From: Phyllobates terribilis
Lineage: Eukaryota
Assembly (NCBI RefSeq): GCF_046119375.1
Contig: NW_027362762.1
Coordinates: 90,768,001-90,832,000 of the forward strand
DNA: 64,000 bases
Direction of reading: 5' to 3'
Shown here: one piece after another, positions 1 to 22,529 of the stretch
Numbering within the stretch: position 1 is the stretch's first letter
Layout: each line of letters opens with the position of its first letter
Notes under the pieces: model-generated
What the model saw: the letters and a program-made list of their open reading frames with translations, nothing else
The model's database searches: none
Told to the model about the DNA's origin: nothing
Program-made: the position numbers and the translations under genes

Positions 1-520
1 TGGTGTTTTTCATTGGTTAAATGACTTTGGGTCACTGATCTCATACCAGTATTTCATACATAGTGATGGACCACATCAAATTAAAGTCACTCCAGCATGG
101 CCCAAAAGGGTTCTGGGCATCAAAGTGGGCAAATAGCCACTTTTCACAGATTTGAATAAGTAACTGGTGTTTTTCAGGGTTAAATGACTTTGGGTCACTG
201 ATCTCATACCAGTATTTCATACATAGTGATGGCCCGCATCAAATTCAGGTCACTCCAGCCTGACCCAAATGGGATCTGGGCATCAAAATGGGCATCAAAA
301 TTGGCAAATAAGCATCAAAATTGGCAAATAGCCAATTTTCAAAGATTTGAATAAGTAACTGGTGTTTTTCATTGGTTAAATGACTGGGCCACTGATCTCA
401 TACCAGTATTTCATACATAGTGATGGACCACATCAAATTCAGGTCACTCCAGCCTGGCCCAAATGGGTTCTGGGCATCAAAGTGGGCAAATAGTCACTTT
501 TCACAGATTTGAATAAGTGT
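1..520. repeat. Left terminal-inverted-repeat array, ~3 copies of a 164-bp unit
   Basis: Unit start TGGTGTTTTTCA recurs at 1, 165 and 360; the second unit is lengthened by internal GCATCAAAATTGGCAAATA duplications. Confidence 0.93.
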
Positions 521-865
521 TACTTATCGGCCACTGATCTCATGAGTGCTGCGTGCAGTATATAGCCAATATGAGCTGTGTGTGCTATAGGGAGAGCGCT
601 ATATGGCCAGCGGGCGTGCTATGTTTGGTATATGGCCAATGTGAGCGCTGGGTGGCAGTATATGGTTAGTGTGAGTGCTGTGTGCGGTATGTTTGTAGTG
701 TGGAGTAAGTGAGGAGTAGCAATGCCACTCATCATTTTTTACACTACTAAGGTAGAGTAAATTACAGCAAAAAAAGTACAACAGTCCAAGGCTTAAGCAA
801 CATTTCTGGTGGAGCAGCAGTTGCAAGATGTGCCTTAATCACTAATATGCACATGTTTTAAACAC

Positions 866-1155
866 ATGAAGAATCTGGAGGAAGTGCAGAGAAGAGCAAC
901 CAGAATGGTGACAGGTCTGCTAACAATGTCCTATGAGGAACGGTTAGAGGATCTAGGAATGCTTAGCTGCAAAAGAGAAGACTAAGAAGAGACTTAATAG
1001 CTGTCTACACATATCTGAAGAGCTGCCACAGTGTAGAGGGATCGTCCTTATTCTCATTCGCACACGAGAAGCAATGGGGATACAGATTAGATATTAGAAG
1101 ACACTGTTTGATAGGGGGTGATCAATCAGTGGAACAGGCGGCCACGAGAGGTGGT
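866..1155 (+). mobile_element. CR1-type LINE fragment (RT C-terminal / 3' region)
   Basis: Decayed reading LEEVQRRATRMVTGL..MSYEERLEDLG…RRLR.DLIAVY.YLK; shares GTGGAACAGG.GGCCACGAGAGGTGG with the insert at 27183-27344. Confidence 0.8.
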
Positions 1156-1493
1156 GAGTAGTGTTGAGGGAGTATACTCGTTGCTCGAGATTTACGAGCA
1201 TACTCGGGCGAGTACCTCTTATCATCGGAGTTCTCGGCGTGTAAGTTTTTCCCGTTCCGTGAACATGATTTGCGACTGTTTGACAGCCGACCCTGATGCT
1301 AAGTCACAAGATAAAGAGCAAACAATTTGCAGACAGTTGGTACTTCAATTAAAAGTAGTGAGATAATGGAGTGTTCCATTGTTCAAGGTGGAATGGGTAT
1401 GACTGAGCTAAATGGTACCTTCCCAACAAAGGCACAGCAAGCTTTTAGAGAAGTCTTTACAGTTATTTCTAACAAAGCAGGAGTTTTTACACT

Positions 1494-4282
1494 GTGAAGA
1501 GAAGGTACGTCTGCATTTTAATATCGATTACAATGGCTTGGAAATATTTCATGACCAAGATCTGGCTGAAGATAACAGTGAAGCTATTCAATAAACACAA
1601 ATCTACCTTACACTTGGATGGATACAGAAAGCCTTCATCTGTTTGGGGGATCATGCCTTCCCACATACTGGATAACAACCTGAAGACTCGAAAGTGGCTT
1701 TACCAATTATGGCATGAAGATCGCAGATGTTTGCACAAAAGAACAGAATCATCGGCAGCATCTTTTACTACAGCTACAGACTGCAACAGTGTGAATGAGG
1801 ATGATCAGCTGTATTGTATATGCAGGCAAAAAAACAATCCAGATGAACCATATGCGCAATGTAGTTCATGTCAAGACTAGTTTCATCCAGCCTGTGTGGG
1901 ATATGTGACCATTGAGGATATAGAAGTTATCTCACCATGGTTTTGTCCATCATGCAAAAAAACCTCACTACAATCAAGGACTATATCTGTTGAATCAGAA
2001 AGTAAAGACATAAAAAGGAATTTATTCCCTAACATTCAGGAAAATACAATTCCAACATTCCAAAATAGTCCAACACAAGAGCATATAAGTGAAGAAGACA
2101 ATGAAGAAAATGCCACATCAGATTACCTGGGTAACAATAACCATCAAACTTTGGACAACAAAAGCCAAACAATTAAGTCTTTGACTGTCCAAAAAATGCT
2201 CCATGTTTACACCAGTACAACAAGGACATCTGACAGTAAAAATGGACTATTTTGTTCTGATTGTCCAGCAGAGTTTTGTTTGACAATTTCTAAAGAGGAA
2301 TGGAGTCAAATAAAGCCAATTAAAAAGTATGGCTATAGAATATTAAAACCTGGCTGGGCAGATATCTTGTGTAGGAAATTTCACAAAGTCAACAATGTTT
2401 GTGTTATAAAATTCATTTATAGCCGAGTAAGATCAATTCAGTCAAGGGAAAAAAATGCATTGTATTGGCATGCCAGAGCAATATGCAAGTTTGCTGGATG
2501 TACAAAGTATTTTTTTTCAATTGATAAAAAACCCAAAAAAGAATGTTATGAAGTTGAGATAAATGTAAATGTTTCTGGATCCATTAAACATGTCAGAAGC
2601 CAATCCTTCCAGAGGCATACACGGCAAAAGGAAAGGAACACTTTAAAAATGGAATTAGGACAGTTGAAACCAAGTCTACTTTATACCAAAAAAGTAGCAA
2701 GCTCTGATGCAGAGGAACTATTCTTTGGCAATTTAAACAATGTGAAAACAAGGAATATAATCCAGAAAATCTCAAGTGAGAAAAATCTTGAGAACAGATT
2801 GAGCAAAGATTTTTTCATGGATTGTCTGCTTGTGCAAAAGTTGCAAACAGAAAGTGTCCAAAACCCAACAGAGCTTAACCAGGCGTACATGCAGTACTTT
2901 GGAGTGTCTCCATTTGTTGTACACATGTACTCAGACGCACAGTTGTATGTACTAAAAGACTTGCAAGGAGCAAAAAAATGTTGCTTGTATTTAGATGCAA
3001 CTGGATCAGTAATTAAAAAAACAGAAAACATATCACATAAAATTCTATATTATGCATTGTGCATATTAGTGCCTGGGAAAGCTAAAATTACATTACCTAT
3101 AGCGGAACTGATGTCATCAGACCAGAGTACTCCAACAATTCAGCATTGGTTATCTTGTCTGTGTCGTGATTTTTTTTATGTTTGCAAACAGAAACTCGTA
3201 CCGCAGAAAGTGGAGCTGGATTTTAGCTGGGCGCTTATCCACGCAGCATTAAATACATTTTGCAATTTTGGTTTAAGTGAGTATTTACAAAAATGCTTTA
3301 CAGCTGCAGAAGGAAAAATGAAATGCAATTTCACTGTTATCCACATATGTTCTGCTCACATGATAAAGCTAGTTAGCATGAAAGCAACCAGACACAATGT
3401 AAGCAAGCAAAAAAAGGAGTTTTTCATACATTTATTTGCTTTGCTGCAATATGCAATCAATATTAATGACCTTAAAAATGTACTTGCACAGATGGTGTAT
3501 GTGTTCCAGGCCAATGTGCAAACAAGGAATTGTAAAAAGTATATGAAAACTAAGAAAAAACATTGAAAACCAAGATCTTAATGATACAGAGGTGATTCCT
3601 GGCATGAGCACTGAGAGCAAAATTCATTTGGATGGAACTGATGGAAACATATAAAAGAGTCACCATTTTCTAAAGTTTTTTTTTAAATTATTGAAGATGC
3701 AAAACGATTGGCCCAAGAGGAGAGTAACCAACAGGTGTGTGGTGATGTCAATGAATTGTTCTGCCCTCCTCTCATATCTGTCTTGGGAGTCATATTGTGC
3801 CAGAATCCCACTGTGGAGCGGACTCATGATAAACTACATAAACAGGGGGCAGCGAGGGACACCAATTCTATAGCCGAAAACTGATTTTGTGTTGTAAAAA
3901 AAGTTGTTTTAAATGATAAATTACACAGGAGGCCGGGTGACTTTCTGCAACAGATGCATACATTTCTAATTGGAAGGATACGGGAAATTGGACTTAATGT
4001 ATTAAAAACAAAGGTGATTACAGAAACCCTTTCAGAAAATGAGAGAATACAATCTGTGACTCCAGAAATGAAGCCAGAACTTGTGTTACAACAAAACACG
4101 CAACTGGAGGAGCCATTTTGTAAAAAAGAAATGTGGTAAAAAAGGAAAGAAAAAAATAGTCCAAAAAAGGCAAAATATTACAACCCCCCGAACACCACAA
4201 AAAAAAGATAATGCAATGAAATCAATTTGTCCACCCTGGGCAGGAAAAGGCAGACTTGGGAGAAGAAAAGTGATTTTAAAAA
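1494..4282 (+). pseudogene. PHD finger + MULE/NOF-type DDE transposase, 5' part, disrupted
   Basis: C4HC3 PHD LYCICRQ…CSSCQD*FHPACVG…WFCPSC (TAG at 1878-1880). D at 2994 (YLDATG), D at 3219 (ELDFSWAL), CSAH at 3348-3359, E at 3876 (TNSIAEN*F). Frameshifts at ~3550-3800; stops at 3882 and 4137. Confidence 0.85.
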
Positions 4283-4291
4283 CAGACAGTA

Positions 4292-5193
4292 ATGTCACAG
4301 ACACAGAAACTCGGGAGAATCTTATTATCGCAAGCCCAAATATTACAAGAGCCACAAACAGACAAAAAACGGAAAAGGAGGGGAGGACGCAAACATAGCA
4401 AACCCCCCAGGCATGACAACTCGCCGAAAGAAATATTTTTAACATCACATAAATCCAATGTTCTGAATTTCTCAAAACAAGTCTTAACTCAGAAACAAGA
4501 TGAAGTTCTTTTACTTGGCTTGAATTTTGTACCAGACAGTAATTTCAACCTTTTCTCCACTCTATTGGATCTGAATAGATTCATACGGAATCTTAATATA
4601 AAAAAACACTTTACAACAGAGGATAATGAGCAACCTGAACTCCCTCAAATTACTGTCAATGAATACAGAGACTTGAATTTCAAGGAACAGATGTCTTTAT
4701 TGCATTTGCAGGATCTTCAGAATCCTTTGGAACCGGCTTCTATTCAAACCTCGATGTCTACTTCATTCAAAACTAGAAATCCTTCTTTTTATCCCTTACA
4801 AACACGGGTGGACTGTATGTGTCCTGGAAGCGATCCAATGGAAAGAGAGCTCAAATCGCTGGCACAGGATGTCAAGCATCATGGTTCCCACCATAACTTA
4901 TCATCTTTACACTATCAAGCATTGCAGGAATTGAGAAATATGCCACATATTGTTATACGTATGGCTGATAAGGGGGGCTTAGTAGTTGTGCTGGACACTG
5001 ACACATATAGATCCCAGGTTGCATCTTTATTGGAGGATTCATCCACATATCGTAAATTAAGGTGTGATCCGATTGTAGATATTAAAAAACAAACCTATGA
5101 AATTGTAAGTGACGGTTATATGTTGGGTGTATTATCTAAAAACCAAAGAGATTACCTTTTGGTAGATTTTCCAATCACCCCTATTATGCATGC
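4292..5193 (+). pseudogene. Penelope-like ORF, N-terminal part
   Basis: NVLNFSKQVLT..QDEVLLLGLNFVP and VIRMADKGGLVVV motifs; rejoins across the LTR element as PIMHA|LPKVHK. Confidence 0.88.
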
Positions 5194-6418
5194 TGTAACG
5201 GGTCTGGGAGGCGGAACCTCTGAGCTACTATACAAGAGGGCGGTCCTTGTAAGGGAGCGGGTGGCGACCAGGCAGGCAGTCACAGTAGGTGACCGGGACA
5301 GTCTCTAGAAGAACGGGCAGGAGGTCACGGCAAGTGACCGGGGCAGTTTCTGGGTGAACGGGCAGATGGTCATGGCAAGTGACCGGGGCAGTCTCTGGGT
5401 GAACGGGCAGATGGTCACGGCAAGTGACCGGGGCAGTCTCTGGGTGAACGGGCAGATGGTCACGGCAAGTGACCGGGGCAGTCTCTGGGTGAACGGGCAG
5501 ATGGTCACAGCAAGTGACCGGGGCAGTCTCTGGGAAAAGGGTTGGTACGACCTGTGGCGGCTGATGGTAGACGTGAGCTCCCAGGTGAGCAGGCGAGAGT
5601 CTCTGGATAAACGGGTGGTCACAGCATGTGACGGCGGAGCCTCCAGGAAGACCAACAGACAGGCGACAGATGAGCGCTCCCAGGTGAGCGGGCAGGAGTC
5701 ACTGGACAGGCAGGTGGTCACAGCACGTGACGGCAGAGCCTCCAGGTAGGCTAGCAGACAGGCAGCAGATGAGCGCTCCCAGGTGAGCGGGCAGGAGTCA
5801 CTGGGCAGGCAGGTGGTCACAGCACGTGACGGCAGAGCCTCCAGGTAGGCTAGCAGGCAGGTAGCAGATGTGCGCTCCCAGGTGAGCGGGCAAGCTGGTC
5901 CATAGACAGACTGACAAGAGTTGGAAGGCAGACCGTCGGACCTCAGGCAAGCAGGCAGGTAGTTGATGTGCGCTCCCAGGTGAGCGGGCAAGCTGGTCCT
6001 TAGACAGACTGACAGGAGTAGTAAGGCAGACCGTCGGACCTCAGGCTAGCAGGCAGGTAGCAGAATATCGGGCAGGAAACAGACAGCAAACTGGCAGGAC
6101 TCTGGCAGGAATCAGGCAGGTAACTGGCAACGGGACCTGAGGGCTGAAGCAGAGTAGAACAGTGCAACAACATTGCTCGGGCACCTCCATTTTGGAGGAG
6201 GTGCCTTATATATGGTGAAGTCCTCCGGCCATTGGCCGGGGACTCCTTAGGACGGCGCGCGTGGCCCCTTTAAGAGGGAGGGAGCGCGCGCCCTAAGCAC
6301 AGTGGCCGGGAAGGAGCGCGCGCTGCCAGCAGAGCGGGAGGAGGACGCCGGGCTCGGAGCAGAGAGGTGAGGGGAACAGCGTCCCTGCCTAGCAGAGGGC
6401 AGGGACGCCGACGCTACA
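5194..6418 (-). repeat. 3' LTR (1225 bp) with internal 45-bp and ~72-bp tandem units
   Basis: Direct repeat of 10634-11903; adjacent to the polypurine tract. Confidence 0.96.
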
Positions 6419-9400
6419 GTACCCCCCCCCTTTAGGCCCCCCCTTTTTTAGGCCAGACAGAAATTTAGCAAGGATGAGAGGGGCATGGATGTTCTCCCGG
6501 GGCTCCCACGTTCTCTCTTCAGGACCAAACCCCCTCCAATCTACTAGAAAAAAGGTCTTCCCTCTTACCCTTTTGGTGGCCAGAATGTTCTCTACCTCAA
6601 ATTCGTTTTCAGCGGAAACCGGAGCAGGAGGCGTGCCTGTAGACTTGGAAAAAGAGTTAAGTACCACAGGTTTGAGGAGAGATACATGGAAGGAGTTAGG
6701 GATCCGCAAGTTGGCCGGGAGTTTCAATTTATAGGCCACCGGGTTGATCTGACTGATGACTTCCAGAGGACCGATGAACCGAGGCCCTAACTTATAGGAA
6801 GGAATCTTGAGCCGGACATACTTGGACGAGAGCCAGACCTTATCCCCTGGACGGAATTGAGGAGGATCCAGACGTTTTTTGTCAGCATGTCTTTTCATAC
6901 GCTCGGATGACAGAAGGAGTGCGGACCGGGTACTCTCCCATGTGGAGGAAAATTTGTTAACAAGAGATTCCGCAGCCGGATTGTCCACCGAGGTAGAGAC
7001 AGGAAACGGGATCCGAGGATGCTGACCGAAGACTACAAAAAACGGGGATTTGGAGGAAGATTCGCTCTCGTGATTGTTGTACGAGAATTCGGCCCATGGC
7101 AGGAGATCCACCCAGTCAGAATGGTGGGCATTAACGAAGTGCCGGAGGTAACTGGTCAGGATCTGATTGATCCGCTCCACTTGACCATTAGACTGTGGGT
7201 GGTAAGCGGAGGAGAAGTCCAGGGTGACGTCTAGCAATTTACAAGTGGCTCTCCAGAAACGAGAAGTGAACTGTACCCCACGATCCGACACGATGTGACG
7301 GGGCAGGCCATGAAGACGGAAGATGTGGCGGATAAAGTCTTTAGCCAGCTCGGGTGCAGGCGGGAGGCCTGGCAAGGGAATGAAGTGAGCCATCTTGGAA
7401 AAGCGGTCAGCGACCACCCAAATGACCGTACAACCTGCAGAGACGGGAAGATCAGTAATGAAGTCCATCGCAATATGCTGCCAGGGGGCAGCAGGTACTG
7501 GCAGAGGAAGAAGGCGACCGGCTGGCAGGTGTCTCGGAACTTTGTTGCGGGCACAGGACACACAGGCAGAAACAAAGTCTATTACATCCTTGCGCAGGTT
7601 AGGCCACCAGTAGTGCCGGGAAATAAGCTGGAGGGTCTTTTTCTGACCGGTGTGGCCAGCTAGTTTAGACGAATGACCCCAGTGTAGGATCTTCTCCCGA
7701 TCAGGTACCGATACGAACGTCTTACCGGGAGGGAGACGATTTAGACTCACGGGAGCCACCTGCATTACTCTGGCGGGATCGATGATATGTTTAGGTTCTT
7801 CCTCAAGATCAGATACCAGAAAGGATCGGGACAAGGCGTCTGCTTTGATGTTTTTGTCAGCCGGACGAAAATGTAGAATAAAATCAAAGCGAGCAAAAAA
7901 CAAGGACCACCAGGCTTGGCGCGGATTAAGTCTCTGGGCATGCTGGAGATAAGCCAAGTTCTTGTGGTCAGTGTAAATTATTACCGGATGAAGAGCCCCC
8001 TTGAGTAGGTAACGCCACTCCTCCAATGCCAGCTTGATGGCCAATAACTCTCGGTCTCCTATGGAATAATTGCGCTCAGAAGAGGAGAAGAGTTTGGAGA
8101 AGAAGCCGCAAGTTACCATCCTCCCGGAAGAAGATTTTTGAGTAAGTACAGCTCCGGCTCCAGAGGAGGAGGCGTCAACCTCCAGAAAGAACTGCTTGTT
8201 GCCGTCCGGACGATGCAGCACCGGGGCGGAAGAGAAAGCCTGTTTTAAGGAAAGAAAGGCCTCCTCTGCTTCGGGCGGCCACTCTTTGGGATTAGTACCC
8301 TTACGGGTGAGCGCGGAAATTGGGGCAGTCCGGGAAGAGAAGTGCGGTATGAAGAGGCGGTAGTAGTTGGCGAAGCCCAGGAACCGCTGAATGGCCTTCA
8401 ACCCCTCCGGTCGGGGCCATTTCTCCATGGCAGACAGTTTCTCTGGATCCATTCGTAGGCCGGTCTGAGAAATAATGTAGCCCAAAAACGGAAGCGAGGT
8501 CTGCTCAAAGATGCACTTCTCATATTTAGCGAAGAGGTGGTTCTGCCTGAGCCTGAGCAGGACCTGACGAACGTCCCTCCGGTGAGTCTGGAGATCCGGA
8601 GAGAAGACCAAGATGTCGTCCAGGTACACCACAACGCAGGAGAAGAGAAGGTCCCGGAAGATGTCATTGACCAACTCTTGAAAGACGGCAGGAGCGTTAC
8701 AGAGACCAAAGGGCATTACCAGATATTCATAGTGGCCGTCCCGGGTGTTGAATGCAGTCTTCCATTCATCCCCTTGACGGATACGGACCAGGTTGTACGC
8801 CCCACGGAGGTCCAGTTTGGTGAAGACTCTAGCCCCCCTCAGGCGATCAAATAATTCTGGAATGAGCGGAAGGGGGTACTTATTCTTCACCGTGATCTGG
8901 TTAAGGCCTCTATAGTCTATACAGGGACGGAGAGAGCCGTCCTTCTTTTTTACGAAGAAGAAGCCTGCTCCCGCCGGGGAGGTAGATTTCCGGATGAATC
9001 CCCTTGCCAAATTCTCCTCAATATATTCGGACATCGACCGGGTCTCAGCTGCGGACAATGGGTAAATACGCCCACGGGGAGGAGTAGTACCGGGTAACAG
9101 GTCGACAGGACAGTCGTGTGGTCTATGAGGGGGTAATGTCTCTGCCTCCTTTTTATTAAAGACATCAGCAAATGACCAATAGGGAATCGGAAGTCCAGGT
9201 AGATTAGTTGGGGTAGGAGAAGGACGGACGGGATGAACAGGAACCAAACAAGTCTTATGACAGTCCTGTCCCCAGCGAAGGACTTCTCCGGTCTGCCAGT
9301 CAAGCACGGGTGCATGTCTCTGGAGCCAAGGTAGACCTAGTAAGAGGGCGTGAGAGAGTCCAGGCAGAACATGAAAAGAGATGCTCTCAGAGTGCAGCAT

Positions 9401-9688
9401 TCCCACCTGCAGAGTTACGGATTCGGTGATGAGTTGGATGGGACGTGGTAAGAGGCCTCCATCCACAGCAGCGACAGATAATGGTACAGCCAGAGGTTTG
9501 GTGGGAATGCGGTATTTTTCTACCAGGGACTGTGAGATAAGATTCCCGGCCGCTCCAGAGTCAAGTTGGGCTAGTTCGAAATAACGGTTCTCCCCGCAGA
9601 TAATAGAGACTGACAGTAGCAGAGATGGAGAGGATTTATTCTTGTCTAGGTTGACCTCTCTGAGCGAACCTAGACACAGGCGTTTCCC
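6389..9688 (-). CDS. pol: pol: protease, RT, RNase H, integrase, chromodomain; expressed by -1 frameshift
   Basis: LDSGAAGNLI, LDLRGAY, YLDD, HHCC plus DDE integrase, FEVENILATK…WRGFGPEERTWEP. The frame is open from the slippery site GGGAAAC (9688-9682). Confidence 0.95.
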   Translation of the reverse strand, partial: GKRLCLGSLREVNLDKNKSSPSLLLSVSIICGENRYFELAQLDSGAAGNLISQSLVEKYRIPTKPLAVPLSVAAVDGGLLPRPIQLITESVTLQVGMLHSESISFHVLPGLSHALLLGLPWLQRHAPVLDWQTGEVLRWGQDCHKTCLVPVHPVRPSPTPTNLPGLPIPYWSFADVFNKKEAETLPPHRPHDCPVDLLPGTTPPRGRIYPLSAAETRSMSEYIEENLARGFIRKSTSPAGAGFFFVKKKDGSLRPCIDYRGLNQITVKNKYPLPLIPELFDRLRGARVFTKLDLRGAYNLVRIRQGDEWKTAFNTRDGHYEYLVMPFGLCNAPAVFQELVNDIFRDLLFSCVVVYLDDILVFSPDLQTHRRDVRQVLLRLRQNHLFAKYEKCIFEQTSLPFLGYIISQTGLRMDPEKLSAMEKWPRPEGLKAIQRFLGFANYYRLFIPHFSSRTAPISALTRKGTNPKEWPPEAEEAFLSLKQAFSSAPVLHRPDGNKQFFLEVDASSSGAGAVLTQKSSSGRMVTCGFFSKLFSSSERNYSIGDRELLAIKLALEEWRYLLKGALHPVIIYTDHKNLAYLQHAQRLNPRQAWWSLFFARFDFILHFRPADKNIKADALSRSFLVSDLEEEPKHIIDPARVMQVAPVSLNRLPPGKTFVSVPDREKILHWGHSSKLAGHTGQKKTLQLISRHYWWPNLRKDVIDFVSACVSCARNKVPRHLPAGRLLPLPVPAAPWQHIAMDFITDLPVSAGCTVIWVVADRFSKMAHFIPLPGLPPAPELAKDFIRHIFRLHGLPRHIVSDRGVQFTSRFWRATCKLLDVTLDFSSAYHPQSNGQVERINQILTSYLRHFVNAHHSDWVDLLPWAEFSYNNHESESSSKSPFFVVFGQHPRIPFPVSTSVDNPAAESLVNKFSSTWESTRSALLLSSERMKRHADKKRLDPPQFRPGDKVWLSSKYVRLKIPSYKLGPRFIGPLEVISQINPVAYKLKLPANLRIPNSFHVSLLKPVVLNSFSKSTGTPPAPVSAENEFEVENILATKRVRGKTFFLVDWRGFGPEERTWEPRENIHAPLILAKFLSGLKKGGPKGGGYCSVGVPALC
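6422..6434 (-). other. Polypurine tract
   Basis: G-run on the minus strand immediately before the 3' LTR. Confidence 0.85.
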
Positions 9689-10620
9689 GACCTCTCCGGG
9701 CAGGTACGGATCCGGTGCTCCTTACTGCCACAGTAGAAGCAGCTCCCTTCGGCACGGCGTAAGTCCTGACGAGTTTTGACCATCTTGATCTGGTCGACCT
9801 GCATAGGCTCAGGAGAGTGTACCTGGGGAGAGACGGATGGAGTGACGGGTTTCTGAAAAGTAGGAGCTAGACGTGGAAACCTCCTCTCACGGGTGACCTC
9901 TTTGGCACGCTCCTGGAACCGTAGGTCAATCCGGGTGGCAAGAGTTATTAGGTCATCGAGAGTGGTAGGAATGTCCCGACCGGCAAGTTTTTCTTTAATA
10001 CGGCCGGACAGACCCTCCCAGAAGACGGATACCGGAGCGTCGTTATCCCAGGCCAGCTCCGAGGCAAGGGTACGGAACCGTATGGCATATTGGCCCACGG
10101 TGAGACTTCACTGACGGAGGCGTAGCAGAGATGATGCGGATGAGGTCTTCCGTCCGGGTTCGTCGAAGACTTTCCGGAAAGCCGTGAGAAAGGCAGGCAA
10201 GTCGGACACCAGGGGGTCTCCTCTCTCCCATAGAGGATTTAGCCAGGCCAGGGCCTCCCCGGTGAGATGGGACATGATGAAGGCAATTTTGGCCCGGTCG
10301 GAGTTAAACTGGTGGGACAATAGTTCAAAGTGCAGGGTGCACTGATTTATGAAGCCCCGAGCCTGGGCGGAGTCGCCTCCGAAGCGAGGAGGTGCACAAA
10401 GCCGGGGTCCGGGGTAGGATACCATGGTATTGGTGGGCAGCGGAGCTGCCGGGTTGCGAGTCATGGCACTGGCGGTGGTTGCTGGTGGAGCAATCAGAGT
10501 GTCCAGGCGAGAATTGACATTCCGCAGGCGACCCAGGATGGACTCCTGTTGGGACCTCTGACGGGACAGTTCATGACAGAGGTCCGAGAGCGAGGCAGCT
10601 TGGGTGCCACCGGGTTCCAT
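9670..10620 (-). pseudogene. gag: gag (PEG10/RTL1-like capsid + CCHC knuckle) with one in-frame TGA
   Basis: PPRFGG…ARGFINQC, KIAFIMSHLTGEALAW, CFYCGSKEHRIRTC. TGA at 10110-10108 in LRQ*SLTVGQY. Confidence 0.92.
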
Positions 10621-10621
10621 G

Positions 10622-10631
10622 GCCCGAGCAA
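10622..10631 (-). other. Non-tRNA primer-binding site (self-priming type)
   Basis: Minus strand TTGCTCGGGC lies 2 nt from the 5' LTR and is complementary to the LTR sequence GCCCGAGCAA (11667-11658). Confidence 0.8.
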
Positions 10632-10633
10632 AC

Positions 10634-11903
10634 TGTAACGGGTCTGGGAGGCGGAACCTCTGAGCTACTATACAAGGGGGCGGTCCTTGTAAGGGAGCGG
10701 GTGGCGACCAGGCAGGCAGTCACAGTAGGTGACCGGGACAGTCTCTAGAAGAACGGGCAGGAGGTCACGGCAAGTGACCGGGGCAGTTTCTGGGTGAACA
10801 GGCAGATGGTCACGGCAAGTGACCGGGGCAGTCTCTGGGTGAACGGGCAGATGGTCACGGCAAGTGACCGGGGCAGTCTCTGGGTGAACGGGCAGATGGT
10901 CACGGCAAGTGACCGGGGCAGTCTCTGGGTGAACGGGCAGATGGTCACAGCAAATGACCGGGGCAGTCTCTGGGTGAACGGGCAGATGGTCACAGCAAGT
11001 GACCGGGGCAGTCTCTGGGAAAAGGGTTGGTACGACCTGTGGCGGCTGATGGTAGACGTGAGCTCCCAGGTGAGCAGGCGAGAGTCTCTGGATAAACGGG
11101 TGGTCACAGCATGTGACGGCGGAGCCTCCAGGAAGACCAACAGACAGGCGACAGATGAGCGCTCCCAGGTGAGCGGGCAGGAGTCACTGGACAGGCAGGT
11201 GGTCACAGCACGTGACGGCAGAGCCTCCAGGTAGGCTAGCAGACAGGCAGCAGATGAGCGCTCCCAGGTGAGCGGGCAGGAGTCACTGGGCAGGCAGGTG
11301 GTCACAGCACGTGACGGCAGAGCCTCCAGGTAGGCTAGCAGGCAGGTAGCAGATGTGCGCTCCCAGGTGAGCGGGCAAGCTGGTCCATAGACAGACTGAC
11401 AAGAGTTGGAAGGCAGACCGTCGGACCTCAGGCAAGCAGGCAGGTAGTTGATGTGCGCTCCCAGGTGAGCGGGCAAGCTGGTCCTTAGACAGACTGACAG
11501 GAGTAGTAAGGCAGACCGTCGGACCTCAGGCTAGCAGGCAGGTAGCAGAATATCGGGCAGGAAACAGACAGCAAACTGGCAGGACTCTGGCAGGAATCAG
11601 GCAGGTAACTGGCAACGGGACCTGAGGGCTGAAGCAGAGTAGAACAGTGCAACAACATTGCTCGGGCACCTCCATTTTGGAGGAGGTGCCTTATATATGG
11701 TGAAGTCCTCCGGCCATTGGCCGGGGACTCCTTAGGACGGCGCGCGTGGCCCCTTTAAGAGGGAGGGAGCGCGCGCCCTAAGCACAGTGGCCGGGAAGGA
11801 GCGCGCGCTGCCAGCAGAGCGGGAGGAGGACGCCGGGCTCGGAGCAGAGAGGTGAGGGGAACAGCGTCCCTGCCTAGCAGAGGGCAGGGACGCCGACGCT
11901 ACA
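10634..11903 (-). repeat. 5' LTR (1270 bp)
   Basis: Near-identical to 5194-6418 but 45 bp longer (one extra tandem unit). Confidence 0.96.
11691..11697 (-). promoter_or_regulatory. LTR TATA box (TATATAA)
   Basis: Starts ~30 nt upstream of the putative self-primer / transcription start at 11667. Confidence 0.65.
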
Positions 11904-11908
11904 CATGC

Positions 11909-13543
11909 ATTGCCCAAAGTACATAAGGGAGTCAGCCCACCCCCTATGAGGCCCATCATCTCGGGCATAGGATCGGTCACTGAACGATTAAGTGAGTGGG
12001 TTGACTCGCTTTTGCAACCATTATCACAACGAACAGCTGGTTTTCTCAAAGATACTGGAGATGTATTGGGACAACTGTCTAATATAGTTTGGAGACAAGA
12101 TTTTGCATGGATTGCTTGTGACGCAACGGCATTATATACCTCAATCCCCCGAGAAATTGCAGTGGAAGCACTCTCATATCATACAGTGATTATACGGAAG
12201 ACCTATGTACATTTATTTTACAAGTGGTCAATTTTCTTATGACATGTAATTATTTTTCTTTTGATGGCCAATATTATTTACAATCTAGAGGCGTGTCAAT
12301 GGGTGCTAAACACTCTCCATCATTAGCCAATCTAGTTATGGCCTATTGGGAGGAAGTTTATCTTTACAGTGCTGATAATCCTTTCACCAAACACCTGGTT
12401 TGGTATGGCAGGTACATAGATGACCTACTGTTCGTTTGGTCGTGCGATGTGTCTGCCATACCCGACTTTGTGCAATATTTAGATGTCAATCATTGCAATC
12501 TGACATTTACGCATAGGGTTGAAATTTCTGCCATTTCATTTCTGGATTTGAATTTGCGGGGCATCCCAGATCGACACATATTGACTAGTACTTACTGTAA
12601 ACCACAGTCTGGAAATACTATTTTGCATGCAAGTAGTAGTCATCCACCCCATACTATCAAAGCATTACCTGTGGGTGAATTTACACGTGTTGCAAGGAAC
12701 TGCCATGATGAAAACACTCTATCTACAGAACGTACACATACATGGTCCAAACTTTCAGAAAGGGGGTATCCTAAATGGACCCTGAATAGAGCCAAACATA
12801 TAATCAAACACAAGAGACACCAAAATTTGGGACCACATATTGTTCACAATAATTCTAATAGACTAGTCCTGTCATTGCAGTATAGCCCTCAGTTTAATAT
12901 AATCAAATCTATTTTTTTCAAACACATATCCATTTTGTATGAGGATGCAACTTTACCTAAAATTTTACAATCCAATTGCTCTGTAGTAGCAAGGAGAGGT
13001 GTCACTATTGGTAACATCGTTTCACCGTCTTTTTTCTCCTCTAATAATTTAAAAAGTAATACTTGGCTAAATTACTCTGGTTTCTATAAGTGCGGCCAAA
13101 ATAGATGTCAGACATGCAAATATACATCAGCTACTAAAGAATTTTTCAATTATAACCACACAGAAACTTTCAAAATCAAAGGACACATAAATTGTAACAG
13201 CACGAATGTGGTTTATATAATTCTATGCAAAATTTGTGATCTTATATATGTTGGTTGCACAACAAGAAATCTTAAAGTTCGCATTTCAGAACATTTAACT
13301 GATATATCTTCTCTTTCTAGTACCAACCGTAATATTTCACATGCCTCTAGGCATTTTATTCAATTTCACCAGAGATCGTGCAGTTCTCTACAGGTCATTG
13401 GTATAGAGAGGGTTAAACCTGCACATCGAGGAGGAGATTCCAGACACCGTTTACTCACCAGAGAAGCATTCTGGATTTACAACCTTGGATCCCGCTTCCC
13501 AGACGGACTCAATGCACGCCGTGAAATCATGTTTCATTATTGA
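11909..13543 (+). pseudogene. Penelope-like RT + Cys-rich linker + GIY-YIG endonuclease, one frameshift near 12180
   Basis: LPKVHK…MRPIISG, GVSMGAKHSPSLANL, YGRYIDD, CGQNRCQTC, NVVYIILCKICDLIYVGCTTRNLKVRISEH. Confidence 0.93.
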
Positions 13544-13774
13544 TTCTACTTCATGTTTCTGTCAGTTTATTTTATCTATTTCATGTAACACTCTATGTTA
13601 AAATGAATTTTAACTCTTTTCTTGTTCTTTCTCTCTATAATGGTTTTATTGCTTTTTCCATTTTATGTGATTGGCTCACACTAATTATGCACCCTATTCA
13701 CACTCTCATGTGACCAAGTATATCGATCTGATTGGTTGTTATTGGATATAATACTATAGTGTGTCATATGCATG

Positions 13775-13820
13775 TCAGCTTTGACAAAGAACACATCTCT
13801 GTGTTCGAAACGCGTTGCGT
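13775..13820 (+). ncRNA. Minimal type I hammerhead-like motif with U3-A8 core variant
   Basis: TTGACAA-A-GAACAC/ATCTCT/GTGTTC-GAAA-CGCGT; palindromic ACGCGT in place of helix III. Confidence 0.6.
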
Positions 13821-14003
13821 TTTTTCCATGTGAGATTCCCCGAAATTTTTAAACTGCGTGGATTTGCTTCAATAAATATTTGCACTTTTGGAAGCTGGTT
13901 TCTTCAACTTTTTTTCATGCAAACACGTGAGGCCACACGTACCCGTGCTTCCTTCCAAAGCCTACAGCAATCAGGTGAGCTGAATCTACTTTCCTCTTTT
14001 TTC

Positions 14004-14362
14004 ATTTTAAAAAATACATGTACAATTGACAATATCCTTTATATTGCCCACTTGGTGATGAAGACAAATAATTGGTTACTGAAAGAACTTTAAGAACTAA
14101 AAACAAGAGATAGGAGTATAAAGTTGCTCATTGATGTTCACAGCTGTTTTCAAAGGAAAGACTTGATAAAGGGAAAGATCACATGGCTACAGCAATTGGA
14201 GCGGTTCCATGGAAGAACTATATGGGACGCGTATGGCAGTGAAGAAGAGTTCATAGTCTGCAGACTCAGCTATCTAAACAGCACAACATCAACATTCACT
14301 TGCACAGAGCCATCTTGCCCCAACCCTTCAATTCTGAGAACTGCAAACAGCATTGAAATTTG
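14004..14362 (+). pseudogene. Continuation of the MULE ORF after the Penelope insertion; cysteine-protease-like segment
   Basis: Removing 4283-14013 gives in-frame RRKVILK|NTCTIDNILYIAHL…WDAYGSEEEF. Ends at splice donor TG|GTAAGT; one TAA at 14091. Confidence 0.75.
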
Positions 14363-15455: not shown

Positions 15456-16142
15456 AAATATATATATATTTACTTAATTTATTTACTGATTATTCCTTCA
15501 TGCATTTTGCCATCTTTCCTTTTGTCTGGTCCTTAAACCTTGCATGGATTCCTCGTACTGTTCTTTTTTATGTTTTTATCTGTTTTTCTATAAATTTTTC
15601 TTTGCATTTATATTAGGTTTTAGTAATTCTTCTCGTGCTAGAGTCTTTATGATCTGATGCATGTGACCTGTATTTACCTGTGGGACTATATCGCTAATAT
15701 CACATTTAAGACATTTACAAGGTGATTTACGCCAGAATTCTGCCATAATAGCTTTCAGAAATTGGGGCCATTGTGCTGGGTTTGAAACTAACTTACTTAA
15801 AATAGTGTATGGATGTAAGTTTTCTTAAAGCATTACTTTAAATCAAATTTATGAACAAAAAAATAAAATCAAGAGTTGAGCATCACAAATTATTCAAGGT
15901 TACACTGCCTGTGCAAAAAAAGTATGTAAGACAAGATTCCAAACAAGAATAAGTTGTATTCAACATTATGCCTTATTGTAGTTTGGTTGTGGATTTGGGT
16001 GACAAATAAAATTGTGGATTCTCCTAGTAACACCCAAATTATTTGTAGAAAAAAAATGAATTTCCTCTTTGACCTCAACATTGATTTATTTGAAATATAA
16101 ATAATAATTTATTGTATATAATTACTTATTCTAATTTCTTAG

Positions 16143-16220
16143 CTGTGAAAAGTTCAGTAATCATCAAGCCACAATTAATGCATGGACGTCGGGTTTTCAA
16201 AATGACTGCAACAGAAAACG
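16143..16220 (+). other. Candidate exon of the MULE gene
   Basis: Pyrimidine tract + AG acceptor, 78 nt, phase 2-2, open frame CEKFSNHQATINAWTSGFQNDCNRK; weak GTTAAT donor. Confidence 0.45.
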
Positions 16221-16726
16221 GTTAATTTTTCCTAAAGTATAAACTAGCATGCTTGATATGAAATAATGTTTCAACATACAGGAGAAATATTTCATAAACT
16301 ATTTCTACACTGAATAGTACACCCCTTAAGGATTCAGTTATTGTAAAATTGGTGATCAGAAATTTCTTCATTTTTTTTCATTTCTGCTTCACAATATTTA
16401 CTTTTTTCCACTTTTATTTTTACAGCATTGATCACCCAATCTTATAGATGGCTGCTTTTTCTACTATACCAACACTAAATATTACCTTTATGTAAATATA
16501 AAGCTGTCCTGTGTTGGATAAAAGTAAAATAGGACCTTTTTAGAGCATGTACAGTATGTAGGTGAAGATTGCAATACCTGAATAACTTACAAATTTACAC
16601 TTGTTTATATTACATTTTTATTTGAAATCCCCTTTTAATATTCCACATAATCATTCCTTTGCAGCCATTAAAAAATTACTTTTTTTTTCATGTATACAAT
16701 AAATAGCTTTATTGATTTTCTAACAG

Positions 16727-16894
16727 AAGCAACAAAGATTCCTGTAAAGGAAAACGAATATGCTTAGGAAAAGAATTTAAGAATGGATCTCCCGGTCTTC
16801 TTTTTGTAAACATTGTTGGTGACCCAACTTGCAAGCTGAAACCTCCTCGGAGTCCAGAAACACTTCCTTCAACCATTACATTTATACAAATAAG
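16727..16894 (+). other. Candidate exon of the MULE gene
   Basis: TTTTCTAACAG acceptor, 168 nt, phase 2-2, open frame SNKDSCKGKRICLGKEFKNGSPGLLFVNIV…PETLPSTITF; AG|GTAAAT donor. Confidence 0.5.
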
Positions 16895-18412: not shown

Positions 18413-18432
18413 TCCGACCCCTGTGAAGATCA

Positions 18433-18630: not shown

Positions 18631-19329
18631 ATCCCTGATGACGTGAGTGGAGACCAAGACAGTGGATAGCGTGATCCGGAGTTCAGACAAGATAAAGCAG
18701 TAGAAGGTCTGAGTGTTGAGAACAAAGACGGGTCATGTAACAGGACGCCCAATGGTACCGCCATAAGTGAGATAGGTAACAGGCCAAGAAGGAACAGCCG
18801 CTGGCTAGTGATGAGCAAACAAGAACTGTAAAGTTTGAGGTTAGTACCTGATGAACTCGAAAAACACAGATTTCTCATGGAAGTCTGTTGTACAGTTCAG
18901 TTTCGGATGCCGAATAAAGTAGCACAGCCAATCAACAAGCTTTTTGGCTGTGGGCACTTCCAGAGCCATCACAGCCATGCCAATGCCATAGCAATCTTAA
19001 AATGGCTGGGTAGTTCCAAAGACTACAATTCTTTGGACACAGTAATTTTATGTGACACATGCTTGTGTAAGGCGGGGACGGCACACCAGAAGTAGTTGTA
19101 GCTGAAGACCAAGTACCGAGGGATAACTGCCACCGGGAGGTTATGGAAAGCTTACATGCCCTAAAATTTACGGCATGAGAAACTAATCGGCATGAGAAAA
19201 TAATCGCAGATGTGAGCTGTACCTTAGAGTAACATTCAGCCAAGTGCAATGCGATTTTTTATGAGATGGCACTAGCCCCATTACATCACAAGTGGGAGCA
19301 AGCTCTAAGGCTGAAATAAAATAAAATAC

Positions 19330-20179
19330 GCAGTGTAAAATCTTAAAAAAAGCTAGTAAATACGCACCTCATTATCCCCTATGGGATAACGCAAGTGCTG
19401 TGCACATGCTGCCTATTTTTATGCAGCAGAAACGCTTTGTGTAAAAATACGCAGCATGTTCATTATTTCGTCGTTTGCACAGCGTAATCGCCGCCATAGA
19501 CTTGTATTGGAATGCTTAATATACGCATGGCTACATGCCCATGATGAGCATATTGAGCGTTCAATGTGCGGATGGTACCCGGGTCTGGAGGAGAGGAGAC
19601 TTTCCTCCAGGCCCAGGTGCCATTTACCTGTAGTAAAAAAAGAATTAAAATAAAAAAATGAATATTCTCACCTACCGCCAGCGCGATCTCCCGTCCTCAA
19701 ACCTTGTACAGTCTTTTCTGTAGTGGTGAAGGACCTGTGATGACGCGTGACCTGTCACATGAACAGCTGACGTCCTCACAGGTCCTTCACCACTACAGAA
19801 GACTGCACGAGGATCGCGGACGGGAGATCGCACCGGCAGAGGGTGAGAATAATGATTTTTTTAAATTATTTTTTACATTCTATCTTTTACTATTGATGCA
19901 GCATATGCAGCATCAATAGTAAAAGTTGGTCACACTTGTCAAGCACTATGCTTGACAAGTATGACCAACCTGTCAGCACTTGTCAATCACTTTTCCAAGT
20001 GATGCTAGCATCACTTAGAAAAGCGCTTGACATTACGCATGAAAAGTAAACATGAAAGAAAATGCTTGATTTAGGCGGGAAAAACGCATGCAAATTACGC
20101 ATGCGTTTTTCCCGCCAGGGAGATGCAGAAATTGAAGCAGAAAATGTCTGCTTCATTTCTGCAACGTGGGCACATAGCC
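19330..20179. mobile_element. Harbinger/PIF-like MITE, same family as 40162-40974
   Basis: Right terminus CGTGGGCACATAGCC-TTA; shared internal GATGGTACCCGG.TCTGGAGGAGAG segment. Left end uncertain. Confidence 0.65.
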
Positions 20180-21069
20180 TTAGGCTGAGTTTCGGAGGAG
20201 CACCAAGGTGGCAGAAACGGGAGCATTAAGCAGGCTGTCATAGTAAACTGTCAGTGATCGTGTCAGAGATCGCAGATGGAAGCTGGCATTCCATTTAAAT
20301 GCTGATTGTCAGAGATTGACAGAAGTTAAATGGTTAACAGCAGCTGCTGTAGCTCATTACTGGCTGTTAGAAACAGATATTTAATATATTCCATATCTCC
20401 GTGTAGAGAGAGCCCTGCTCCTGACCCCATTCCACATGCCATCATCCCTGCAATCATGTACATGTATGTGATGTTGTGTTACGGGGTTAAATGGAGCTTC
20501 ATTCAAATTATTACATTGGAATAGCAATTTCCAGCTCACACATAAAACGCAGTATGAGCCAGGAAGTCACATGACTCGAAAGACAACCAGAGCCATACTG
20601 AAAACCTGGGGAAGATGTCATTTGGTGAAAAATTAAATAAAAAAAATTAATGGGAGTGTTTCTTTAAGGAAGCTACCAAAATAATATTTATGTCTCTGTA
20701 TAGATTTACAAGGTAAATGCAGTTGGTGTACTTATTGCTGTGCCTCAACATGAAATAGACTTAAAGAAGCCATGTGAATAAACCCTTATGTGAGTTCACA
20801 ATTATTATGTATTTAATAATTATTTTTTTTTAAAAGGTACAACACTGTAGCAGTCACCTACAACACAGGAAATCATGTTCCGCCCAGGTGACGGCGTAAA
20901 ACTTGTGACTCCAAAATTCTTGAAAACTGTTTTAAAACCTGGCGTTACACCCGTATATATTATTTTTGTGAGACAAAATGGCGATAAACTCGATAACTAA
21001 GAAGAAATATTAGTTTGTTAAAATAAAAGTTCTCTGCACATGTGGTTGTTGTTTTATTTACAAAATGAT

Positions 21070-21345
21070 CATAACTTTGTATTTAGATTTGAGAGTCCTC
21101 AGTGGTTGATACCTTTTGATGGCTAACTGAAAAGATGGTAACAAATTGCAGCTTTTTAGACTACACATGTCTCTTCATCAGGCATAGTACAACATAAAAT
21201 CTGAAGAGTCACATATGTATACACAATAGGACACAGAAATAACGCAATGGATGAGACAAGTGTGAAGCAGAACTTTGAGTATAGGAGAAGAGATAAACAG
21301 CCATGGCCGTAAATATTGGAGCAATTCATAGATAAGTGTGAAAGT
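21070..21345 (-). mobile_element. Non-autonomous Penelope-type repeat with degenerate hammerhead; same family as 34390-34790
   Basis: Minus strand ATGC-CTGATGA-AGAGAC…GTCT-AAAAAGCTGCAA (GAAA lost); flanks align to 34520-34770. Confidence 0.75.
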
Positions 21346-21356
21346 TTTATTGTCCT

Positions 21357-21800
21357 GTGATGCCCAGAACCCATTTGGGCCAGACTGGAGTGACCTGAAT
21401 TTGATGTAGGCCATCACTATGTATGAAATATTTGTGTGAGATCAGTGGCCCAAAGTCATTTAAACCCTGAAAAACACCAGTTACTTATTCAAATCTGTGA
21501 AAAGTGGCTATTTGCCCACTTTGATGCCCAGAACCCTTTTGGGCCATGCTGGAGTGACTTTAATTTGATGTGGTCCATCACTATGTATGAAATACTGGTA
21601 TGAGATCAGTGACCCAAAGTCATTTAACCAATGAAAAACACCAGCTACTTATTCAAATCTGTGAAAAGTGGCTGTTTGCCCGCTTTGATGCCCAGAACCC
21701 ATTTGGGCCAGGTTGGAGTGACCTGAATATTATGTGAGCCATCACTATGTATGTAGTGGTGGTGTGAGATTAGTGGCTCAAAGTCATTTAACCCTTTCAG
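21357..21800. repeat. Right terminal-inverted-repeat array (164-bp unit)
   Basis: Reverse complement of the array at 1-520. Confidence 0.93.
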
Positions 21801-22529
21801 TAACGCCCTTCAGTGCCCACTTTGATGCCCATTTTTATGCCAGTTTTATGACATGGAGCTGCTTTTAAGCGTTTTCACATCAGGGCACCTCGCTGCAATA
21901 TATTCTTTCATTTATTTATCTATTTTTTGTAATTAAACCTGTAGAAAACAGCAAAACAGAAATTGCTGAATAAGAAACCAACTCAGCCCCGAATAAAAAA
22001 CCAACTTCAGCATCGTGCCTAACACTCCCTGTATGACATTACATAGCCAGATCTTTAGGAATAATATTTCTAGAGTCAGTTGATGATATGTAAATAAAGG
22101 CGTTGACTGTCATGAGAAATAATGATGAGGATTATATGCAGGGGCGACCCCGCGCGCCAGGGGCTCCTTGCTTTTGGAAAGGGCCTGATTTGGTCTCTGA
22201 GGGTCTCATCTCCGGCCATTTTATCACTCAAGTCTTATGGAGAATGTGGACTCAGTTCACACTAGTTTTGTTGCTTTCTGCCCTTGATTTTGGGCTAGAT
22301 GTGACCTGAGGCTGGGGTGGGTGTTTTTTTTACACCCTGGAACCATTTTTTTCTATTTGGAAAAATTTTACTTCTGAATCAAACGGTCCCCCACAGGGGC
22401 GTGTGATACATAGGCCGACTACTCTGGGGACACTAACGCCCCCATGGCTCATTCTGGGAGCGCAGGGTCTCGATAGCATTTCATGTCCATTCATTACTGT
22501 TATTATTTCTCGTGACTTATTCTTGTCAT

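What the first reader, a model, noticed from the sequence alone, without database searches (positions are those of the whole stretch)
1..21891. Giant foldback Mutator (NOF/Rehavkus-type) transposon with a PHD chromatin-reader finger in front of its transposase
Seen: inverted 164-bp arrays ~21.6 kb apart, and one reading frame carrying a complete C4HC3 PHD (LYCICRQ…C..C..[W>stop]FHPAC…WFCPSC) upstream of a D-D-CxxH-E transposase. Known: CxxH-containing DDE enzymes with long subrepeated TIRs define the MULE/NOF/Rehavkus group, and LYCIC..W-type PHDs (BPTF/ING class) read H3K4me3. Inference: the element may have used histone-mark reading to choose targets. It sits ~700 bp from a CpG-rich MED17 promoter, which fits but does not prove this. 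Whether this domain architecture is already described in amphibians could not be checked.
Basis: partly seen in the sequence, partly recalled or inferred. Interest (0 to 1): 0.8.

Follow-up and report, generated by a model that had tools for sequence, protein, structure and literature searches.

The report
Dead NOF-type Mutator transposon with PHD finger
This is a broken copy of a frog "jumping gene" of the Mutator/NOF kind whose cutting enzyme carries a histone-reading PHD finger at its front end. The layout is real and is also found intact in other animals, but a PHD finger in such elements is already known, and much of the element's 22-kb size comes from other jumping genes that landed inside it.

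Summary
**Observation: confirmed.**
- Inverted arrays of a 164-bp unit lie at 1-533 and 21355-21846. The best arm pair is 184 nt long and 99% complementary.
- One reading frame (1635-4205) carries a C4HC3 PHD finger at 1815-1955, with a TAG at the cage-tryptophan codon (1878-1880).
- Downstream in the same frame are D (2994), D (3219), CxxH (3348-3359) and E (3876).

**Interpretation: partly supported.**
- Fold search places the transposase in the MULE/IS256 fold. Drosophila NOF is by far the nearest reviewed protein (E 6e-36), and the match runs through the DNA-binding domain, the DDE core and a USP-like cysteine-protease tail.
- The PHD is closest to BPTF, PHF8 and PHF2, all H3K4me3 readers. 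Three of the four cage positions stay aromatic in intact relatives.
- Intact relatives such as P0014 (1076 aa) and P0055 (1112 aa) have the PHD and the transposase in one ORF.
- "Giant" is misleading. A Penelope-like element with a Ty3/gypsy chromovirus nested inside it adds 9.7 kb (4283-14003), and several small high-copy repeats fill the 3' part.
- The copy is dead: at least 9 in-frame stops and a frameshift.
- The proposed right terminus at 21891 is not supported. Contig depth stays at roughly 100 copies up to about 21990-22020.

A PHD finger is already the published hallmark of Rehavkus and of some animal Mutator transposases. Targeting by histone mark is untested. The same scan noted other PHD/foldback Mutator elements elsewhere in this genome.

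The parts
1..533 (-). Left inverted sub-repeat array, about 3.2 units of 164 nt. It is cut by the window start, and the outermost unit and the true terminus lie upstream of the window.
1635..4329 (+). Transposase pseudogene, 5' part: N-terminal helical region, PHD finger, zinc DNA-binding domain (FAR1/WRKY-like position) and DDE core. In-frame stops at 1878, 3564, 3579, 3582, 3612, 3639, 3684, 3882 and 4137, and a frameshift near 4186.
1815..1955 (+). C4HC3 PHD finger of the BPTF/PHF8/PHF2 class. A TAG at 1878-1880 replaces the cage tryptophan.
2994..3878 (+). Catalytic residues: D 2994-2996, D 3219-3221, C 3348-3350, H 3357-3359, E 3876-3878.
4283..14003 (+). Nested Penelope-like retroelement (reverse transcriptase plus GIY-YIG endonuclease) inserted in the transposase tail. 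Its 10-bp target-site duplication ATTTTAAAAA lies at 4273-4282 and 14004-14013.
5194..11903 (-). Ty3/gypsy chromovirus nested in the Penelope-like element. LTRs at 5194-6418 and 10634-11903 are 98.5-98.8% identical. The 5-bp target-site duplication is CATGC. It has gag and a 1025-aa pol ORF ending in a chromodomain.
14004..14360 (+). Transposase tail exon with the USP-like Cys box (NTCTIDN; Cys codon at 14019-14021).
16138..16877 (+). Two further tail exons (16138-16221 and 16740-16877), matching Pogona P0001 residues 824-901.
21080..21335 (.). Very high-copy short repeat inserted just inside the right array. A second copy lies at 34511-34766.
21355..21846 (+). Right inverted sub-repeat array, 3 units of 164 nt.
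21847..22020 (+). Non-array terminal segment. It is still repeated, at roughly 100 times single-copy depth. The unique contig begins at 21991, so the true right end is probably near 21990-22020 rather than 21891.

Best explanation
**What it is (shown).** The stretch is one dead copy of an autonomous cut-and-paste DNA transposon of the Mutator superfamily, NOF-like group.
- Its ends carry inverted subterminal arrays of a 164-bp unit.
- Its single gene encodes, in order: a short helical N-terminus, a BPTF/PHF8-type PHD finger, a zinc DNA-binding domain, a DDE/CxxH RNase-H-like catalytic core, and a spliced USP-like cysteine-protease tail.
- After insertion about 0.8-0.9 kb upstream of the MED17 start codon, a Penelope-like element landed in the tail exon and a Ty3/gypsy chromovirus landed in that element. 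Small high-copy repeats entered the 3' part, and the gene picked up stops, including one at the PHD cage tryptophan.

**How it works (inferred).**
- In intact family members the DNA-binding domain probably recognises the repeated units in the arms.
- The DDE core cuts and pastes.
- The PHD finger probably binds the H3 tail trimethylated at K4. That would tether or activate the transposase at active promoters, much as the RAG2 PHD does for RAG1.
- I put about 0.35 on PHD-dependent H3K4me3 binding that biases integration.
For: - **Arrays:**
- **One frame with PHD and DDE:**
- **Family:** 13 close homologues, including fish proteins named after NOF. A profile search found 7303 cluster representatives at E<=1e-3.
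- **Intact fused ORFs:** P0014, a single 3231-nt ORF, and P0055, identical in two assemblies.
- **Transposase fold:** the model core has pLDDT above 90. The best Swiss-Prot match is NOF P16320 at E 6e-36 over 869 aligned columns, then alpha3, FRS, ZSWIM and IS256 transposases. The best PDB match is the ISCth4 transposase.
- **Tail:** it matches NOF residues 782-1042, DRIP1/C14orf28, and weakly USP folds. Cys-box and His-box motifs are present.
- **PHD:** nearest BPTF (1.3e-10), PHF8 and PHF2, with rmsd about 2 A to PHF2 and PHF8. BPTF cage position Y10 is Y or F, Y23 is Y and W32 is W, while Y17 is N.
- **Nested elements with intact target-site duplications:**
- **Multi-copy state:** 3' backbone contigs have 5-15 times single-copy depth at 98-99% identity. 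The arrays are thousands-fold deep.
Against: - No Pfam MULE or Transposase_mut model matches any member tested. Superfamily placement therefore rests on fold and motifs.
- The termini and target-site duplication are unseen, because the left end is outside the window and the right end is ambiguous.
- No other copy was read, so the link between the arrays and this gene rests on this one locus and on the NOF-FB precedent.
- One cage residue (BPTF Y17) is Asn.
- No binding or insertion-site data exist. A single insertion near a CpG-rich promoter has no statistical weight.
Confidence: 0.8

Rival explanations
1. The PHD finger is not a target-site tether. It could be a regulatory or anti-silencing module: it might allosterically switch the transposase on when bound to active chromatin, or keep the element's own chromatin open, without shaping where it lands.
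For: RAG2's PHD both localises and activates RAG1, as discussed in papers listed. In this superfamily the PHD occurs at either end of the protein, together with Ulp1, OTU or USP-like proteases (PMC2836005). That pattern suggests a general chromatin or SUMO/ubiquitin toolkit rather than one fixed tether.
Against: Nothing here separates tethering from activation. Both predict activity at H3K4me3 chromatin.
Confidence: 0.25
2. The PHD binds something other than H3K4me3, such as unmodified H3, another methyl-lysine or a non-histone partner.
For: The BPTF Y17 cage position is Asn in the vertebrate clade. PHF2's PHD has also been crystallised with a non-histone peptide (7m10).
Against: The 15 best PDB sequence matches are established H3K4me3 readers: BPTF, PHF8, PHF2, KDM7 and SHL/EBS. 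Three cage aromatics are conserved across both N-terminal-PHD clades.
Confidence: 0.15
3. The two arrays are not the ends of the element that carries this gene. They could be independent foldback or satellite repeats that happen to flank it, with the gene's own element having other, shorter ends inside.
For: The array units are thousands-fold deep, against about 10-fold for the backbone. The relative locus L002 shows no inverted repeats around its gene within the 2.3 kb available upstream.
Against: The arms are mirror images in the correct orientation around the gene, and unit 1 (left) pairs with unit 2 (right) at 99%. No alternative inverted repeat brackets the gene. NOF-FB and Rehavkus both have this layout (PMC6446971).
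Confidence: 0.1
4. It is a decayed host gene (a domesticated transposase), not a transposon copy.
For: Relatives are annotated as ordinary genes with isoforms in Pogona and Thunnus. The tail domain has a vertebrate host look-alike, DRIP1/C14orf28.
Against: It is flanked by inverted arrays. It is present at about 5-15 near-identical copies. It is riddled with stops and nested elements.
Confidence: 0.03

Closest known systems
FB-NOF of Drosophila melanogaster (NOF 120.7 kDa protein, P16320)
   Same: It is the best structural match over the DNA-binding domain, the DDE core and the USP-like tail. Its ends are also long inverted repeats built of tandem sub-repeats.
   Different: Only 18% identity. 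The frog clade has an N-terminal PHD finger, and the match to NOF starts after it (NOF residue 106). Whether NOF has a PHD could not be checked. The host here is a vertebrate and the sub-repeat unit is 164 bp.
Rehavkus (Repbase group; MULE sister or outgroup)
   Same: [quoted passage not shown]
   Different: Reported only from arthropods and annelids. The minisatellite is described only before the 3' terminal inverted repeat. The 9-bp target-site duplication could not be tested here. No Rehavkus reference sequence was available for a direct comparison.
Animal Mutator and Ginger1 transposases with C-terminal Ulp1/OTU + PHD (Bao, Kapitonov & Jurka 2010, PMC2836005)
   Same: A DDE transposase fused to a cysteine protease of the ubiquitin/SUMO system and a PHD finger. 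Such C-terminal-PHD members also turn up in this superfamily search (P0028 and 11 others).
   Different: Here the PHD is N-terminal and of the CxC BPTF type, and the protease is USP-like rather than Ulp1 or OTU.
RAG1/RAG2 and RAG-like transposons
   Same: A transposase system that reads H3K4me3 through a PHD finger, which gives a precedent for the proposed mechanism.
   Different: A different transposase superfamily (Transib). The PHD sits on a separate subunit, RAG2.
Chromoviruses (Ty3/gypsy with an integrase chromodomain)
   Same: A mobile element that carries its own histone-mark reader. One is nested in this very locus (chromodomain match).
   Different: A retroelement integrase, with a chromodomain rather than a PHD.

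Membership tests
Mutator-like (MULE) superfamily | RNase-H-like DDE core of the MULE/IS256 type, with a CxxH motif after the second D | tested here: met
   D, D, CxxH and E are invariant or nearly invariant. Fold matches go to FAR1/FRS, ZSWIM, alpha3 and IS256-family transposases, and to the ISCth4 structure.
Mutator-like (MULE) superfamily | Match to curated sequence models (Pfam MULE / Transposase_mut) | tested here: not met
   No such hit for the window ORF or for 8 relatives at E<=0.1. The precomputed Pfam column is empty apart from accessory domains.
Mutator-like (MULE) superfamily | Target-site duplication of 8-11 bp | not testable with these tools
   The left end lies outside the window, and the right end is ambiguous.
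Mutator-like (MULE) superfamily | N-terminal WRKY/FAR1-type zinc DNA-binding domain | tested here: inconclusive
   A four-strand sheet with nearly invariant C350, C378, C383 and H413. It aligns with the N-terminal part of FRS proteins. No domain-level search was run.
NOF / Foldback group | Transposase most similar to Drosophila NOF over its full length | tested here: met
   Foldseek E 6e-36 against 5e-10 for the next hit. The tail also matches NOF 782-1042. Fish homologues are named after NOF by their sources.
NOF / Foldback group | Long inverted ends composed of tandem sub-repeats | tested here: met
Rehavkus | PHD finger in the transposase | tested here: met
   The position is N-terminal in this clade.
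Rehavkus | Minisatellite next to the terminal inverted repeat, and a 9-bp target-site duplication | tested here: inconclusive
   164-bp arrays are present at both ends. The target-site duplication was not readable.
Rehavkus | Clusters with Repbase Rehavkus references in a tree | not testable with these tools
   No Repbase sequences were available.
H3K4me3-reading PHD fingers (BPTF/PHF8/PHF2 class) | C4HC3 zinc ligands and an aromatic cage | tested here: met
   All 8 ligands are present. Cage positions Y10, Y23 and W32 are aromatic in intact relatives, and Y17 is Asn. In the window W32 is a stop.
H3K4me3-reading PHD fingers (BPTF/PHF8/PHF2 class) | Binding to H3K4me3 | not testable with these tools
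   Needs a bench assay.

The most novel reading that the evidence does not exclude
A widespread animal clade of NOF-like Mutator transposons, reaching teleosts, reptiles and frogs, couples an N-terminal H3K4me3-reading PHD finger and a USP-like protease to its transposase. It uses the histone mark to direct or license integration at active promoters. This would be a one-polypeptide counterpart of RAG1/RAG2 and a direct molecular explanation for the promoter preference of Mutator elements. Its protease tail may also have given rise to the vertebrate gene DRIP1/C14orf28.
Probability: 0.3. Interest if true: 0.6.

Novelty: new member of a known kind. Interest (0 to 1): 0.4.

Why it matters
Mutator elements are known for inserting near the 5' ends of genes, and the molecular reason is not settled. 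A family whose transposase carries a BPTF/PHF8-like reader of the promoter mark H3K4me3, and that still has naturally intact members, gives a direct way to test whether a DNA transposon can choose targets by reading a histone mark. For genome annotation, the result shows three things: NOF/Rehavkus-type elements with PHD fingers reach vertebrates; the published host range of arthropods and annelids is too narrow; and this '22-kb giant' is an ordinary-sized element inflated by nested retroelements.

Tried and rejected
- **Pfam on the ORF pieces and 8 relatives:** no MULE model hit.
- **Profile search against PDB sequences:** nothing.
- **The look-up of encoding contigs for the vertebrate NCBI homologues P0001, P0004 and P0005:** not on record. 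For P0008 and P0061 no DNA was served.
- **L002 and L003 (P0055):** no inverted repeats or arrays bracket the gene within the DNA held, so family termini and target-site duplications could not be learnt from relatives.
- **Right-end motif GAGGTGCCCTGATGTG:** it occurs once, at 21876-21891, but that many matches is expected by chance in 60 of 100 shuffles, and depth does not drop there.
- **Third homology search, with the tail alone:** one fragment only, so no sequence-level link to C14orf28. The link rests on fold and features alone.
- **tRNA scan of the element:** none.
- **Yuan & Wessler 2011:** could not be read.
- **Earlier findings searched by sequence:** blank.
- **Domesticated host gene:** considered and rejected, because of copy number, inverted arrays and decay.
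- **Canonical USP assignment for the tail:** Pfam UCH does not match, so I keep 'USP-like fold' only.


Full report
**Observation**

The region begins inside an array of about 164-nt units (1-533). The reverse complement of this array recurs at 21355-21846. There are eleven inverted pairs, and the best is 184 nt long and 99% complementary. Tandem Repeats Finder gives period 164 on the right, and 194 on the left where one unit carries a 30-nt duplication. Aligned unit by unit, the first left unit in the window mirrors the middle right unit. The partner of the outermost right unit, and the true left terminus, therefore lie upstream of the window.

Between the arrays, a single frame (1635-4205) matches intact relatives from their residue 43 onward. 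It contains a C4HC3 PHD finger at 1815-1955 whose cage-tryptophan codon is TAG (1878-1880). With X at the stop it matches Pfam PHD at E 5e-8. Downstream in the same frame are LDATG, ELDFSW, HICSAH and TNSIAEN. These are the D, D, CxxH and E positions that are invariant or nearly invariant in the family alignments.

**Anatomy**

The 21.9 kb is a composite.

- The transposase gene is broken at 4282/4283 by a Penelope-like element, which carries a reverse transcriptase and a GIY-YIG endonuclease. This element is flanked by a perfect 10-bp duplication, ATTTTAAAAA, at 4273-4282 and 14004-14013.
- The Penelope-like element is itself split by a minus-strand Ty3/gypsy chromovirus at 5194-11903. Its LTRs are 98.5-98.8% identical and its 5-bp duplication is CATGC. 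It has gag and a 1025-aa pol ORF ending in a chromodomain.
- The transposase resumes at 14004 with the motif NTCTIDN and continues in two more exons, 16138-16221 and 16740-16877.
- The remaining 3' part holds several very high-copy short repeats, for example at 19424-19607, 19976-20343 and 21080-21335. Two of them have second copies elsewhere in the window.
- The gene carries at least nine in-frame stops and a frameshift near 4186. This copy is dead.

**Copy number and the right end**

I laid Logan contigs of four DNA runs of the same organism on 17400-22900.

- The unique flank is one clean contig starting at 21990-21991, with word depth 4-14.
- Four separate 3' backbone segments are covered by contigs of depth 57-93 with 1-2% differences. 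That is roughly 5-15 near-identical copies.
- The arrays sum to 8,500-19,500.
- The segment 21847-21999 stays at about 400-1,250 at every sampled position (21855, 21905, 21944, 21982), with no drop at 21891.

Its motif is also a match expected by chance in 60 of 100 shuffles. The boundary between repeat and unique sequence is nearer 21990-22020. These are assembler word depths and only approximate. The target-site duplication cannot be read.

**What the protein is**

- The window ORF has 13 clear homologues. The best is from the lizard Pogona (53% identity), and there are teleost proteins that their sources name after the NOF-FB protein.
- An exhaustive profile search found 7303 cluster representatives at E<=1e-3 and 1140 at E<=1e-30. 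This is a very large, mostly unannotated animal family.
- No Pfam transposase model matches, and no PDB sequence matches.
- An AlphaFold model of the intact relative P0014 has pLDDT above 90 through the core.
- Its best reviewed-protein match is Drosophila NOF P16320 (E 6e-36, 869 aligned columns). K. lactis alpha3, Arabidopsis FAR1/FHY3/FRS, ZSWIM proteins and IS256-family transposases follow. The best solved structure is the IS256-family ISCth4 transposase.
- This places the enzyme in the MULE/IS256 fold, with NOF as its nearest characterised relative.
- The tail has a conserved NTC..DN Cys box and, in long members, an NHF...YDG His box. Its model is confident only for the first 130 residues or so. 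It matches DRIP1/C14orf28 (E 3e-8), the C-terminus of NOF (E 5.5e-4) and, weakly, USP and coronavirus PLpro folds. The feature search agrees. I therefore call it a USP-like papain-fold domain whose activity is untested.

**The PHD finger**

- PHD and transposase are fused in intact members. P0014 is a single 3231-nt ORF. P0055 is a single 3339-nt ORF that is identical in two assemblies. P0004, P0007, P0057, P0061 and P0062 (a sea cucumber) have the same N-terminal CxC-type PHD.
- Eleven more distant members, and P0028, carry a PHD at the C-terminus instead. In P0028 it follows a weak Ulp1 match.
- On a FastTree of 122 cores, N-terminal PHDs fall in two clades and C-terminal PHDs in at least four. 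Many predicted proteins are truncated, so absence of a PHD is uninformative.
- The nearest solved PHDs are BPTF, PHF8, PHF2, KDM7, SHL/EBS, DIDO, CFP1 and Spp1. Structural superposition on PHF2 and PHF8 gives about 2 A rmsd.
- In the BPTF alignment, cage residues Y10, Y23 and W32 are aromatic and Y17 is Asn. That BPTF, PHF8 and PHF2 read H3K4me3 is established knowledge and appears in the PDB titles.
- Binding by this PHD is an inference.

**Context**

MED17 exon 1 starts at 22787. The CpG-rich core lies at 22600-22800, with CpG obs/exp 1.18. The element ends 0.8-0.9 kb upstream of the ATG. One insertion cannot test a targeting preference.

**Comparison with what is known**

- Dupeyron et al. 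2019 (PMC6446971) list Rehavkus with a 9-bp target-site duplication, terminal inverted repeats of 26-400 bp, a PHD finger and a minisatellite, with hosts limited to arthropods and annelids.
- Bao et al. 2010 (PMC2836005) align Ulp1+PHD domains of Ginger1 and Mutator transposases.
- MULE-NOF and MULE-MuDR appear as RepeatMasker classes in fish and frog genome papers.
- RAG2's PHD gives a precedent for coupling H3K4me3 to a transposase-derived enzyme.

Within the library I could search, the new points are the vertebrate hosts, the N-terminal position of the PHD and the USP-like tail. I could not check Repbase or Dfam.

The scan has also noted an 11.3-kb Mutator/foldback element with Ulp1+PHD (s1-230063) and a 15-kb foldback Mutator (s1-198898) elsewhere in this frog genome. 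I did not test either.

**Verdict**

- The classification as a NOF/Rehavkus-type Mutator element with a PHD finger in front of the transposase is right.
- 'Giant' is an artefact of nesting.
- The proposed right terminus is unsupported.
- The histone-guided targeting idea is reasonable, has precedent and is testable on intact relatives, but it is untested.
- Overall this is a new member of a known kind and of moderate interest.

Noticed in passing
window 13971-16877; model of P0079:345-788: The transposase's USP-like tail has as its best reviewed structural match the vertebrate protein DRIP1/C14orf28 (E 3e-8 for mouse, 4e-7 for human, about 20% identity over about 290 columns), ahead of the tail of NOF itself. 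The feature search also lists a C14orf28 cluster at 0.95. DRIP1/C14orf28 may be a domesticated transposon tail. A sequence search with the tail alone found no link.
   Followed up: partly
window 5194-11903 (minus strand): The nested Ty3/gypsy chromovirus looks young. Its LTRs are 98.5-98.8% identical and differ by one 45-bp repeat unit, its 5-bp duplication is intact, and it has an uninterrupted 1025-aa pol ORF ending in a chromodomain. The LTRs themselves contain 45-bp and 98-99-bp tandem repeats.
   Followed up: partly
window 19424-19607, 19976-20343, 21080-21263: Short repeats with summed contig depths of 2-7 x 10^5, which is tens of thousands of times single-copy depth. They are among the most abundant sequences of this genome. 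Two have further copies at 40211-40977 and 34388-34766.
   Followed up: no
window 860-1160: The stretch between the left array and the gene reads in translation like the C-terminal end of a CR1-type LINE ORF2 (my own reading, not tested). It may be an inserted or captured fragment.
   Followed up: no
window 23092-23998: A strongly G-skewed 52-bp minisatellite (9 nearly perfect copies and many degenerate ones) begins about 100 bp after MED17 exon 1. An assembly gap of 154 N lies at 25505-25658.
   Followed up: no
P0057, P0052 (NCBI MES9880808.1, MES9883988.1): Two full-length members of this animal transposase family are deposited as proteins of a bacterial metagenome-assembled genome (Sedimenticola sp.). 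This is most likely host-animal DNA binned into the bacterial genome.
   Followed up: no
L002:13100-15600: In the assembly that holds P0055, a degenerate repeat of about 480-500 bp lies 7.5 kb downstream of the gene. No matching inverted copy lies within the 2.3 kb held upstream.
   Followed up: no
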